Assembly: GCF_048593235.1 (NCBI RefSeq)
Contig: NC_133622.1
Span: forward strand, 16,492,001 to 16,556,000
Direction of reading: 5' to 3'
Length of the DNA stretch: 64,000 bases
DNA from: Sminthopsis crassicaudata
Taxonomy: Eukaryota
Positions 24,001-27,000 of the stretch are shown here, piece after piece; within the stretch, counting starts at the first letter, position 1; each line of letters begins with the position of its first letter. Below the pieces are notes generated by a model, which saw nothing but the letters and a program-made list of their open reading frames with translations, was not told where the DNA came from and did not search any database. A program made the position numbers and the translations under genes.

Positions 24001-27000
24001 AGCATAGGGCCTGACACATAGTAGGTGTTTAATAAAGGCTTATTCTCTTGGTCTTTGTTTTTGCAGAGAGAGACACCAAAGGGAAAATAACCGCTGTCTT
24101 CAGAGGGTTCGGAAAAGTCATCCTCATCTTCATATTTCTCTACTTCTTTGTATGTTCCTTGGACGTTCTCAGCAGCGCTTTCCAGCTGGTTGGAGGTATG
24201 AGAAGCGACATCATCCCTATTTTGATGTCTGAAACATAACCTCTCCTTTCAGACTGGAATCTGTGTTTGTTTTGTGTTTTGCTGGACTGGGCCTCTGAGA
24301 AAAGTGAAAGTCAGATTTACTCTAAGGAAGTGAAGAAGAGGCTTCAGGCAGCTTTGTTCAAGTCTTCTCCATCTCACTTTTTATGGGGTTAAATGTTTGC
24401 ATGTAAATGTGCTGGGTGGGGGTACCCTTCCAGGCCAGAGTAATTCTCCCCAGGCCCAGGAATGTGTAAGAGTGTATGAGGAATGGCCAGAGGATTTGTT
24501 CTAATCCAACAGAGACCCTGACTGGAGTGAGAAGGTGTTGAAGTTCAGGGTGGATGATGAGAATAACTGGCACATTTATGGTTTCAAATTTGACAACAAG
24601 ATTATTTAATGATCAATTCTGATGGATGTGGTTCTTTTCAACAATGAAGTGAATCGGTCAATTATAATAGACTTGTGATGGAGAGAACCATCTGCCCCAG
24701 AGAGAGCACTCACTATAGGGACTGAATGTAGATCACAACATCTACACCCCCCTTTTTGTGTTTTGTTTTTTTTTTTTTGGCTCTCATTGTTTTTTCTTGG
24801 TCTGATTTTTCTTGTGCAGCATGGTAACTGGAAATATGTATAGAAGAATTACACTTTGCATATATTTTGAAAACAAAAAGGTAAAAAAAAATTAGTGAAC
24901 TAAATTCTAAAAATAAAATTTGTATGGAAGTTTAGTCTCTTGGCTCACAGAGTGAGACAGAAGCAGGGCCTGACTCATGGCTTCAGAAACCAAGTTGGAT
25001 CCTGGCTGTCCCCTGCTGTAGTGCCCATTTTGGCAGCCAGTGACTCCTCACTCCCTTCCTGCACTCTTGTGAAGGGAATATCATCAGAATTTCATTTTCT
25101 GAACTGGATTTCAGGTGGCACTGACTCCCAAGAAGAGATCAGAGAAAGTTAAGACTTTGAAAACTTCTAGCAAGGGAGGATCACATCATTTCCGCCTTTC
25201 TCCTTTCTTGCAATCAGGGTGCTGCACTCAGAGGCAGGGCCAGAGAGGGAAACTGCAGTAGGACTTTGTTAAGTAACTTATAACAAGTAATATTATAAGA
25301 GAATATAATGATATTAATTATTATAATAATATAATGAGAAACCTGACAACAAATGGCATCCCTTGTAGGAAGTGGCGCTTAAACTTTGGATTGTGGCCCA
25401 CCTGTCCACAATTATGTTATCTTACAAAACAAAACATAAAACATTACCTTTGCAGGAAAAATGGCTGGGGAGATTTTCCGTGATGGTTCCGTGTTGAGCA
25501 ATCCCATGACTGGCTTGATGATTGGCATACTGGTGACCGCCATGGTGCAGAGTTCCAGCACATCCACTTCTGTCGTTGTCAGCATGGTGTCCTCTTCCTG
25601 TGAGTTACCCCTCACACACACACTGGCACAGGCTTATTAGGAAAACCCAGATCCATTTGAGAATCTTATTCTGAAGCTTATATTTATGTCTTTATTCACA
25701 ATGTGGACTAATCTTTAATCTCTTTTTCCTACTTTTCTGTCCTCAATTTTGGGCCAAAACTGTTATTAACAGACACCACTGGGCAGTAACCATACTTCCC
25801 ACCATTGCTGCCAGTAGTCTCCAGTTTCCTTGCCATTTCCCATGACAATTCTGGGCTCTTCACATGGGAGTTCTTCACATACATCTTCAGGCCATGGTTG
25901 AATGATTGACATGCTGACTACCTTGTAGAATGGATTCCTATTCTTCATCATGGGATTCCATAGCTTTGCTAAGTTTAAAAAACTGCTAATTTAAAAATAC
26001 TTTATCTTATTTAAGCTTTATTTCTTTTCCTGTGAAGGTCCTTATTTTTTGTTCCTCATTTACTTTTTTTCCTTTGACAGTGCTGACAGTAAAGGCAGCC
26101 ATTCCCATTGTCATGGGGGCCAACATTGGGACTTCAATCACCAATACTCTTGTGGCCCTCATGCAGGCTGGAAACAGGGATGAATTTCGAAGGTAGGAAG
26201 CTTGTCTCACTTGTTTGCTAGCCATGCTCTCTCCTTCACTGCCATAACCATCTTTAATAGATAATCTTCACTCCGCTCCACAGATCCCTTCCCTCCCTGA
26301 CTTTTCCAGGGGACCTTCTTCTAGTGCAAATTGTGGGATACGCCATTCAAAAGTCTAATTTTGATCATAGATTAGTATCTGTTGACAATGATTTCACTTT
26401 TGGTACAATGCAATCATCTTGGTAACAGGTGATTGGGGTGAATTTTGGTTTTGACAAACAAAAGGAAATCTCTTTCTTCCATGAAGGGAATATCTTCAGA
26501 ATTTCATTTTCTGAACTGGTTTTCAGGTGTCACGGACTCCCAGGAAGAGATCAGAGACTTTGAGAACTTGTAGCAAGTGAGGATCATGTCATTTCCGCCT
26601 TTCTCCTTTCATGCAATCAGGGTGCAGCACTCAGAGGCAGGGCCAGAGAGGGAAACTGCAGTAGGGCTTTGTGATGAGAAACTTATAACAAGTAATATTA
26701 TAAGAGAATATAATGATATTAATTATAATAATAACATAATAAATAATATAATGAGAAACCTGACAACAAATGGCATCCCTTGCCCCTTAGCCTTGTCCTA
26801 ACTGGCCCTTCCCTGGCCATCCTGTGCCACTGGCCCATCCACATTTAGCCCTCACTGCTGCTTGTTAATGCAATTCGGCCTCAGTCTGTGAATCACCAGC
26901 ACTGCGAGACCTCGGGGTAATCCTGCAGGGTAAATGTCCAGTAAATCGCTAAGTAAACATGATCACAACTCTATTCATTAACACTTAATGTAGACCAAGT

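What the first reader, a model, noticed from the sequence alone, without database searches (positions are those of the whole stretch)
26161..26192. Asp>Asn at a proposed first-Na+ (Na1) site residue (human NaPi-IIa D209)
Seen: exon 6 encodes ...[17 protein letters not shown] (AAC at 26173-26175). Established (from memory): type II NaPi proteins have QxG-D-R here, and modelling and mutagenesis of NaPi-IIa implicated T200, Q206, D209, N227 and S447 in Na1. The equivalents of the other four residues are retained here. Inference: losing this carboxylate could change Na+ affinity, 3:1 stoichiometry or voltage dependence, making this a natural variant of the transporter mechanism.
Basis: partly seen in the sequence, partly recalled or inferred. 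Interest (0 to 1): 0.7.

Follow-up and report, generated by a model that had tools for sequence, protein, structure and literature searches.

The report
Asp-to-Asn in duplicated dunnart phosphate transporter
One extra, marsupial-specific copy of the sodium-phosphate transporter gene SLC34A2 really does carry asparagine at a position that is aspartate in almost every other vertebrate, but new experimental structures do not list that residue among the sodium ligands and the standard copy next door keeps aspartate, so it is most likely a tolerated change in a spare gene copy.

Summary
AAC at 26173-26175 encodes Asn in ...[17 protein letters not shown], in exon 26081-26192 of an intact 12-coding-exon SLC34A2-type gene.

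Asp is otherwise almost fixed. Of 120 vertebrate NaPi-IIb proteins, 117 have D and 3 have N, and all three N-bearers are extra marsupial paralogues.

The gene is not the species' only SLC34A2. It is a dasyurid-specific tandem duplicate ("A2"). The canonical copy ("A1") lies just downstream and keeps D.

The Tasmanian devil orthologue has the same AAC codon in two assemblies. Antechinus A2 has GAC, probably restored by short-tract gene conversion from A1.

A2 is under weakened but real purifying selection (dN/dS about 0.5, significantly below 1). It has changed 5-9 of 195 ultra-conserved positions, against 0-2 in canonical marsupial copies.

The mechanistic premise is outdated. The 2026 cryo-EM structures place Na1 at S193, N196, T197, A217 and D221 and never mention the residue equivalent to IIa D209. 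Electroneutral IIc keeps this Asp. Invertebrate homologues carry Asn.

A change in stoichiometry is therefore unlikely; a mild electrostatic effect remains possible.

Other first-reader notes on this window (A217G; the tandem-duplication hypothesis) and one on the same genome about 388 kb beyond the window's end touch the same gene array.

The parts
26173..26175 (+). AAC codon, Asn208 of P0259. It is equivalent to Asp206 of human SLC34A2 and Asp209 of human NaPi-IIa.
   Evidence: The Sarcophilus orthologue has the same codon. Both A1 copies and Antechinus A2 have GAC.
26081..26192 (+). Coding exon holding the site. It encodes the TM2 segment [11 protein letters not shown], which carries cryo-EM Na1/Na2/Na3 ligands, and the start of the TM2-TM3 turn.
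   Evidence: The Pfam Na_Pi_cotrans match of the exon alone is E 5.7e-6. The PDB zebrafish slc34a2a match is E 2e-13.
20929..21013 (+). Coding exon with the conserved start MAPWPE... (ATG at 20929). Isoform X2 adds 11 residues from an exon further upstream that was not located.
21118..21252 (+). Coding exon (N-terminal tail).
24067..24195 (+). Coding exon (TM1).
25456..25599 (+). Coding exon with the first QSSS motif (HP1).
27820..28015 (+). Coding exon encoding [14 protein letters not shown]... (TM3). Gly219 (codon 27833-27835) stands where human SLC34A2 has Ala217, which is one of the observed Na1 ligands. Asp223 (27845-27847, human Asp221) is retained.
   Evidence: preprint.
28727..28822 (+). 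Coding exon.
29307..29427 (+). Coding exon (large extracellular loop with N-glycosylation motifs and Cys residues).
29989..30156 (+). Coding exon (TM4).
30735..30851 (+). Coding exon with the second QSSS motif (HP2).
30959..31083 (+). Coding exon with GSNIGTTTT (TM5). The Ser equivalent to IIa S447 is retained.
32134..32709 (+). Last coding exon (TM6-TM8, a shortened Cys cluster, C-terminal ...NCTAL) plus the TAG stop.

Best explanation
The window carries the dasyurid-specific tandem duplicate (called A2 here) of the intestinal/lung-type Na+/phosphate cotransporter gene SLC34A2 of the fat-tailed dunnart.

History (inferred):
- The duplication predates the split of Sminthopsis from Sarcophilus plus Antechinus.
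- After it, the spare copy came under weaker purifying selection and picked up several replacements at positions frozen in other vertebrates.
- One of these was GAC>AAC (Asp>Asn) at the cytoplasmic TM2-TM3 turn.
- The Asn has been kept in the dunnart and devil lineages. In Antechinus it was replaced by Asp, most likely through a short gene-conversion tract from the canonical copy A1.

Function (inferred):
- The protein is still a working Na+-coupled phosphate transporter. Both QSSS motifs and the ligands listed for Na2, Na3 and Na4 are intact, as are four of the five Na1 ligands including the key Asp221.
- In the predicted model the Asn sits at the N-cap position of helix TM3, where Asp and Asn are interchangeable as helix caps.
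- It lies 9 to 11 residues along the chain from the nearest residues that bind Na1 in the cryo-EM structure.
- The expected consequence is loss of one negative charge at the cytoplasmic mouth next to Arg207. At most this would give a modest shift in Na+ or voltage dependence, not a new stoichiometry.

Shown here: codon, exon structure, paralogy, conservation statistics, selection estimates, secondary-structure position.

Inferred: functionality, mildness of the effect, the single origin, the conversion.
For: Identity and integrity:
- The exons equal RefSeq P0259 of S. crassicaudata.
- Pfam Na_Pi_cotrans scores 112 bits in two stretches.

Paralogy:
- In the tree of 41 IIb proteins, dunnart P0259, devil P0169 and Antechinus P0170 form a 100/100 clade.
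- That clade is sister (99/98) to the dasyurid canonical copies.
- The dunnart canonical copy, P0307/P0308, has D and A. Its annotated gene range begins about 8.6 kb after the end of A2 on the same strand.
- A2 and A1 lie about 200 kb apart in devil and Antechinus too.
- Introns flanking the exon group the three A2 genes at 85-90% identity, against 74-84% to A1.

Site history:
- AAC in dunnart and devil; GCA GAC in Antechinus A2, identical to Antechinus A1, with the Gly>Ala unique to that species.

Selection:
- dN/dS is 0.50-0.71 among A2 genes, below 1 by Fisher test (p 4e-5 to 0.04).
- Core regions give 0.32-0.61.
- Of 195 ultra-conserved columns, 5-9 are changed in A2, 1-2 in dasyurid A1 and 0-1 in other canonical marsupial copies and platypus.

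Structure and literature:
- The AlphaFold model has helix 180-204, turn 205-208 and helix 209-240.
- The cryo-EM Na1 ligand list omits this residue.
- IIc keeps Asp. Hemichordate and bivalve homologues have Asn. A catfish protein annotated 2A has Glu.
- A dasyurid-ancestor expansion of the SLC34A2 orthogroup is reported in PMC12866920.
Against: - No functional or expression data for this copy were obtained.
- As I recall the 2015 abstract, alanine substitution of IIa D209 shifted voltage dependence and Li+ substitution. I could not read that paper. If the recollection is right, the residue has some electrostatic influence even if it is not a ligand.
- A second change, A217G, hits a residue that is a ligand of Na1 in the cryo-EM structure. 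Three Antechinus A2 copies also have S193T. The hairpin around Na1 may therefore be evolving as a unit.
- Asp>Asn arose a second time in an unrelated possum paralogue (P0166), which could point to selection rather than drift.
- The distance from Na1 is inferred from sequence spacing and a predicted model of moderate confidence (pLDDT 70). It was not measured in coordinates.
Confidence: 0.6

Rival explanations
1. Adaptive retuning of the first sodium site. D206N together with A217G (human SLC34A2 numbering) was selected in the A2 paralogue to change Na+ affinity, Li+/Na+ selectivity or voltage dependence for a tissue-specific job, for example in uterus, yolk sac or mammary gland. The copy would then be a natural mechanistic variant.
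For: - Asn has been kept in two lineages since their split, with an identical codon.
- Asp>Asn recurs independently in a possum clade-B paralogue.
- A217 is an observed Na1 ligand and is changed in dunnart and in all four Antechinus A2 copies. S193T occurs in three of them.
- An opossum SLC34A2-like gene is among the 100 most abundant transcripts in pregnant uterus (PMC5012577), so the extra copies can have specialised expression.
Against: - Antechinus A2 has Asp at this site, and devil A2 lacks A217G, so neither change is required in the clade.
- dN/dS is below 1 everywhere tested apart from the poorly sampled tails.
- A2 also changed five or more unrelated invariant positions. About three of some 15 changed positions fall in the TM2-TM3 hairpin, roughly what its share of invariant columns predicts.
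- The residue is not among the cryo-EM Na1 ligands.
Confidence: 0.25
2. The copy is on its way to becoming a pseudogene, and Asp>Asn is one of several damaging hits in a redundant gene that no longer transports.
For: - dN/dS is raised, at 0.5-0.7.
- Eight changes at ultra-conserved positions, including W72S and W554L.
- The Cys cluster in the tail is shortened.
Against: - The open frame is intact and all 11 introns are GT-AG.
- Orthologues are intact in three genera.
- dN/dS is significantly below 1.
- 187 of 195 ultra-conserved positions are kept, including every motif that binds Pi and Na2-Na4.
- The dasyurid canonical pair has a similar dN/dS, 0.45.
Confidence: 0.1
3. Sequencing or assembly error, or a rare allele of the sequenced animal.
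For: The reads check could not be run. The RefSeq protein that matches probably derives from the same assembly. A search with the exon's open frame found no independent fragment carrying Asn.
Against: The orthologous devil gene has the same AAC in two assemblies, so Asn at this codon predates the dunnart. Sixteen runs from five studies hold the surrounding stretch, although that does not test the single base.
Confidence: 0.03

Closest known systems
Canonical SLC34A2 / NaPi-IIb (for example the dunnart A1 copy XP_074129202-204, the human protein, and zebrafish slc34a2a of PDB 9z60-9z66)
   Same: - Same 12-coding-exon layout and two Na_Pi_cotrans repeats with QSSS motifs.
- GxNIGT(S/T) segments, Asp221, Asn196, Thr197 and Ser193 are all present, as is the C-terminal TAL.
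- 74-80% protein identity to the Antechinus and devil A1 proteins and 62-66% to eutherian proteins.
   Different: - Asn instead of Asp206 and Gly instead of Ala217, plus six further changes at otherwise invariant positions.
- Shorter Cys cluster.
- It is an additional, dasyurid-only copy lying upstream of the canonical gene.
SLC34A3 / NaPi-IIc, the natural electroneutral 2:1 variant
   Same: It is a natural type II transporter with altered residues in the TM2-TM3 region around Na1.
   Different: IIc differs at A215S, A217S, D221G and N196S (preprint) and keeps the Asp discussed here (P0021). The window protein keeps A215, D221 and N196 and changes Asp206 and A217. The IIc signature is not present.
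Human NaPi-IIa Asp209 in the VcINDY-based Na1 model (Fenollar-Ferrer et al. 2015, as reviewed in PMC6325988)
   Same: It is the homologous position. The model counts it as an Na1 ligand next to the Arg210-Asp224 salt bridge.
   Different: The model rests on a template fold that the cryo-EM authors say SLC34 does not share. My AlphaFold model also finds no DASS-like match (TM 0.16-0.22). The experimental Na1 site omits this residue.
Invertebrate SLC34 homologues with natural Asn (Glandiceps talaboti XP_077990687.1, Mya arenaria WAR27857.1)
   Same: Asn at the same alignment position, followed by Arg or Lys and the AFAGATVHD motif.
   Different: They are distant (about 50% identity in this segment), their function is untested, and the Asn is not a derived state within a vertebrate IIb background.

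Membership tests
SLC34 type II Na+/Pi cotransporters (Pfam PF02690 Na_Pi_cotrans) | Two Na_Pi_cotrans repeat domains above the curated threshold | tested here: met
   P0259, which the window exons reproduce exactly, scores 112.2 bits against a cut-off of 29.1, in 2 stretches. Single exons score 20-27 bits each.
SLC34 type II Na+/Pi cotransporters (Pfam PF02690 Na_Pi_cotrans) | QSSS motif in each re-entrant hairpin and GxNIGT(S/T)xT segments in TM2 and TM5 | tested here: met
   [10 protein letters not shown] (exon 25456-25599), [10 protein letters not shown] (exon 30735-30851), [11 protein letters not shown] (exon 26081-26192) and GSNIGTTTT (exon 30959-31083).
NaPi-IIb (SLC34A2) clade | Groups inside the tetrapod IIb clade | tested here: met
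   inside the mammalian IIb clade (100/99), within marsupials (100/100).
NaPi-IIb (SLC34A2) clade | One-to-one orthologue of the single SLC34A2 of other mammals | tested here: not met
   it is one of two dasyurid co-orthologues. The slower-evolving copy A1 lies downstream. Marsupials carry at least two further old paralogue clades.
Electrogenic 3:1 subtype (IIa/IIb) | Ala215-Ala217-Asp221 signature (AFAGATVHD), whose IIc counterparts are Ser-Ser-Gly | tested here: inconclusive
   AFAGGTVHD. Ala215 and Asp221 are kept and Ala217 is Gly, which is neither the IIb nor the IIc state. Electrogenicity can only be settled by electrophysiology.
Electrogenic 3:1 subtype (IIa/IIb) | Cryo-EM Na1 ligands Ser193, Asn196, Thr197, Ala217 and Asp221 are present | tested here: inconclusive
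   four of five are retained (S195, N198, T199 and D223 of P0259). Ala217 is Gly219. I suspect the Ala coordinates through its backbone, but the preprint text I read does not say so.
Electrogenic 3:1 subtype (IIa/IIb) | Measured 3 Na+ : 1 HPO4 stoichiometry and Pi-induced inward current | not testable with these tools
   Needs oocyte voltage clamp and isotope uptake.

The most novel reading that the evidence does not exclude
The dasyurid A2 paralogue is a naturally retuned NaPi-IIb. The paired changes at the TM2-TM3 hairpin are the loss of the Asp206 charge beside Arg207 and Ala217Gly at an observed Na1 ligand. Together they would alter occupancy of the first sodium site or its voltage dependence, and possibly Li+/Na+ selectivity. 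That would give marsupials a second intestinal-, uterine- or mammary-type phosphate transporter with distinct kinetics, and give physiologists a ready-made natural mutant pair (A1 versus A2) for dissecting Na1.
Probability: 0.15. Interest if true: 0.55.

Novelty: new member of a known kind. Interest (0 to 1): 0.3.

Why it matters
If the Asn (with the nearby Gly) does shift sodium handling, the two neighbouring dunnart genes would be a natural matched pair for testing how the first sodium site sets voltage dependence in SLC34 transporters. That question has just become structurally tractable.

More soberly, the result shows three things:
- A residue assigned to Na1 by homology modelling is dispensable in nature.
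- Marsupials carry an unusually large and old SLC34A2 gene array, whose spare copies relax at otherwise frozen positions.
- Short gene-conversion tracts between the copies can erase such changes.

As it stands, this is an ordinary case of post-duplication divergence.

Tried and rejected
Steps that led nowhere:
There is therefore no read-level check of the base and no splicing or expression evidence. No piece of 24000-24041 was sent to any search tool afterwards.
- **The two primary papers** on Na1 mutagenesis (PMC4457043, PMC5018128) are not held. What I say about the D209A phenotype is recollection of the abstract.
- **The exon's 68-codon open frame**, searched to find independent fragments with Asn, gave four fragments, all with Asp.
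- **Foldseek** of the AlphaFold model against PDB gave no significant hit. That library ends in April 2026 and did not return the 9z60 series, so no structural superposition or distance to Na1 could be obtained. No coordinates are exposed to scripts.
- **The look-up of encoding contigs** had no record for P0259 or P0308, because only the longest isoform is kept. It gave no DNA for dunnart A1 (gene range too long) or for the possum gene (file too large). The possum Asn is therefore known from the protein only.

Readings rejected:
- That this is the species' sole NaPi-IIb.
- That the Antechinus Asp shows the dunnart and devil Asn arose in parallel. That history needs four events, against three for a single origin plus one conversion.

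Handling of sequences:
The identical RefSeq protein P0259 served as stand-in. Adjacent exons were joined only inside a script, to verify splice junctions.
- The human protein P0179 appeared among search hits and was part of the batch tally. It was left out of the later alignments, the tree and the fold.
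Full report
**What is in the sequence.** Window 26083-26190 (+) translates to [36 protein letters not shown]. The Asn codon AAC is at 26173-26175, and the exon runs from 26081 to 26192 between an AG and a GT. Six-frame reading shows the other exons of an SLC34A2-type gene between about 20.9 and 32.7 kb. For all 11 introns there is a single GT-AG solution. The resulting reading equals, residue for residue, protein P0259 from residue 12 onward, with TAG at 32707-32709. [quoted passage not shown] All four annotated isoforms carry Asn here. 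The window is therefore from the fat-tailed dunnart or something indistinguishable from it. P0259 scores 112 bits on Pfam Na_Pi_cotrans in two stretches.

**How unusual the Asn is.** In 120 vertebrate NaPi-IIb-type proteins retrieved with a marsupial query, the position is Asp in 117 and Asn in 3. The three are the dunnart protein, a Tasmanian devil protein (P0169/P0309) and a brushtail possum protein (P0166). In an alignment of 160 such proteins the column is one of 195 that are invariant, with at most one exception, in 113 non-marsupial sequences. The family as a whole is looser. Among the best 150 representatives of a search of 1.8 billion proteins with this exon, the position is D 86, E 23, N 19, R 10, K 4 and others. 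Named Asn-bearers are a hemichordate and a bivalve. A Glu-bearer is a catfish protein annotated 2A. A tamarin NaPi-IIc with the electroneutral signature AFSGSAVHG keeps Asp.

**The gene is a spare copy.**
- A maximum-likelihood tree of 41 IIb proteins shows that marsupial SLC34A2 has split into at least three old paralogue clades.
- Inside the canonical clade, dasyurids have a further duplication. A1 comprises Antechinus P0168 and devil P0173. A2 comprises dunnart P0259, devil P0169 and Antechinus P0170.
- A2 has 100/100 support, and A1 plus A2 together have 99/98.
- The dunnart A1 protein exists (P0307/P0308, XP_074129202-204) and has QAG-D-R and AFAGATVHD.
- Its annotated gene range begins about 8.6 kb after the end of the 680-residue A2 gene, on the same strand.
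- In devil and Antechinus, A2 and A1 lie about 200 kb apart on one chromosome.
- The 400 bases of intron on either side of the exon are 85-90% identical among the three A2 genes and 74-84% identical to A1, which confirms orthology.
- The same data place devil with Antechinus: 89.8% against 87.6% to dunnart, and dS of 0.126 against 0.149 and 0.165.
- A 2026 comparative-genomics paper lists the SLC34A2 orthogroup among those significantly expanded in the dasyurid ancestor (PMC12866920). It does not discuss residues.

**History of the codon.**
- Dunnart A2 and devil A2 both read GGA AAC. Devil A1 reads GGA GAC. Antechinus A1 and Antechinus A2 both read GCA GAC.
- The Gly>Ala just before the site is found only in Antechinus, in A1 and in all four A2-like copies. 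Some exchange between the paralogues in that species is therefore needed under any history.
- A single Asp>Asn on the A2 stem, a Gly>Ala in Antechinus A1, and one short conversion carrying GCA GAC into A2 make three events. Parallel origins of Asn in dunnart and devil make four.
- The conversion tract must be short. The flanking introns of Antechinus A2 remain A2-like, and two of the Antechinus copies keep the A2-type Leu eight codons upstream.
- The devil protein is encoded identically in two assemblies. This argues that Asn at this codon is real and old.

**Selection.**
- Nei-Gojobori estimates on codon alignments give dN/dS of 0.50, 0.57 and 0.71 for the three A2 pairs and 0.45 for the A1 pair.
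- All are below 1 by Fisher's test: p = 4e-5, 4e-4, 0.04 and 2e-5.
- In the two membrane cores the A2 values are 0.32-0.61. The tails are near 1.
- At the 195 ultra-conserved columns, platypus and non-dasyurid canonical marsupial copies have 0-1 changes, dasyurid A1 has 1-2, and A2 has 5-9.
- The dunnart A2 changes are W72S, G81E, I168V, D208N, A219G, I269L, N297K and W554L. The older clades B and C have 3-15 changes.
- The Asn is thus one of several hits typical of a copy under relaxed but continuing constraint.

**What the residue does.**
The review PMC6325988 states that T200, Q206, D209, N227 and S447 of human NaPi-IIa were assigned to Na1, with an Arg210-Asp224 salt bridge. The basis was alanine mutants and a model built on VcINDY at 8-11% identity.
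- It reports four Na+ densities. Na1 is bound by Ser193, Asn196, Thr197, Ala217 and Asp221 in human SLC34A2 numbering, and Asn224 belongs to Na3.
- It explains IIc electroneutrality by D221G and N196S. Asp206, Arg207 and Gln203 are not mentioned anywhere in the text.
- An AlphaFold2 model of P0259 (46-sequence alignment, mean pLDDT 70, about 80-88 in this region) has helix 180-204, a four-residue turn at 205-208 and helix 209-240. Asn208 therefore sits at the N-cap position of TM3, at the cytoplasmic tip of the TM2-TM3 hairpin. It is 9 residues after Thr199 and 11 before Gly219.
- From helix geometry I infer that it lies well over 10 A from Na1. This was not measured.
- Asp and Asn are both good N-caps. 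What is lost is a negative charge beside the conserved Arg.
- In the window protein Ser193, Asn196, Thr197 and Asp221 are retained and Ala217 is Gly. It is shared with Antechinus A2 but not with devil A2.

**Verdict.** The interpretation needs trimming on three counts. The residue is not among the Na1 ligands listed for the experimental structure. It does not follow the known natural stoichiometry switch. And it occurs in a redundant, faster-evolving, dasyurid-only paralogue whose neighbour keeps Asp. The most likely reading (about 0.6) is a tolerated or mildly modulating substitution in a still-functional spare transporter. Adaptive retuning of the Na1 region is about 0.25, incipient decay about 0.1, and error about 0.03.

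**Limits.**
- The primary mutagenesis papers were not readable.
- The PDB fold library did not return the new structures.

Noticed in passing
window 27833-27835: Gly where human SLC34A2 has Ala217 (AFAG-G-TVHD). Ala217 is one of the five Na1 ligands in the 2026 cryo-EM structures and one of the three IIa/IIc electrogenicity positions. The Gly is shared with all four Antechinus A2-like copies but not with the devil orthologue.
   Followed up: partly
P0310, P0311, P0312 (Antechinus flavipes; no locus fetched): Antechinus has four A2-like genes differing by 20-58 residues, on two different large contigs. Three of them read NIGTT instead of NIGTS, which is Ser193Thr at another observed Na1 ligand.
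   Followed up: partly
window 32134-32706: The C-terminal Cys cluster is much shorter than in canonical IIb proteins (...[19 protein letters not shown]...), while the terminal TAL motif is kept. W554L at an otherwise invariant Trp is changed in all three A2 orthologues (L, L, M).
   Followed up: no
window about 39800-49800: An earlier first-reader note reports an unprocessed ANAPC4 pseudogene downstream of the transporter gene, and another proposes duplication of an ANAPC4-SLC34A2 block. The tandem A2-then-A1 order I found fits that idea, but I did not examine the ANAPC4 remnant.
   Followed up: no
window about 25050-25150 and 26450-26570: The same short translated motif ([21 protein letters not shown]...) appears in two introns of the gene. 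It is probably two copies of an interspersed repeat.
   Followed up: no
window about 12000-16000: A G+C-rich stretch (0.51-0.59, against 0.30-0.46 in the neighbouring stretches) lies 5-9 kb upstream of the first conserved coding exon. It may be a CpG-island promoter with the 5' exon that supplies the 11 extra residues of isoform X2.
   Followed up: no
Trichosurus vulpecula record (no DNA held): In the brushtail possum the clade-B gene with Asn (641 residues) is followed 45 bases later, on the same strand, by the clade-C gene (612 residues). The old paralogue clades therefore also sit in a tight tandem array. An antisense ribosomal-protein-like call overlaps them.
   Followed up: no
window 6995-7136, 21319-21450, 40254-40708: Runs of N (gaps or masked). 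They were left as they are. The second lies in the intron after exon 21118-21252.
   Followed up: no
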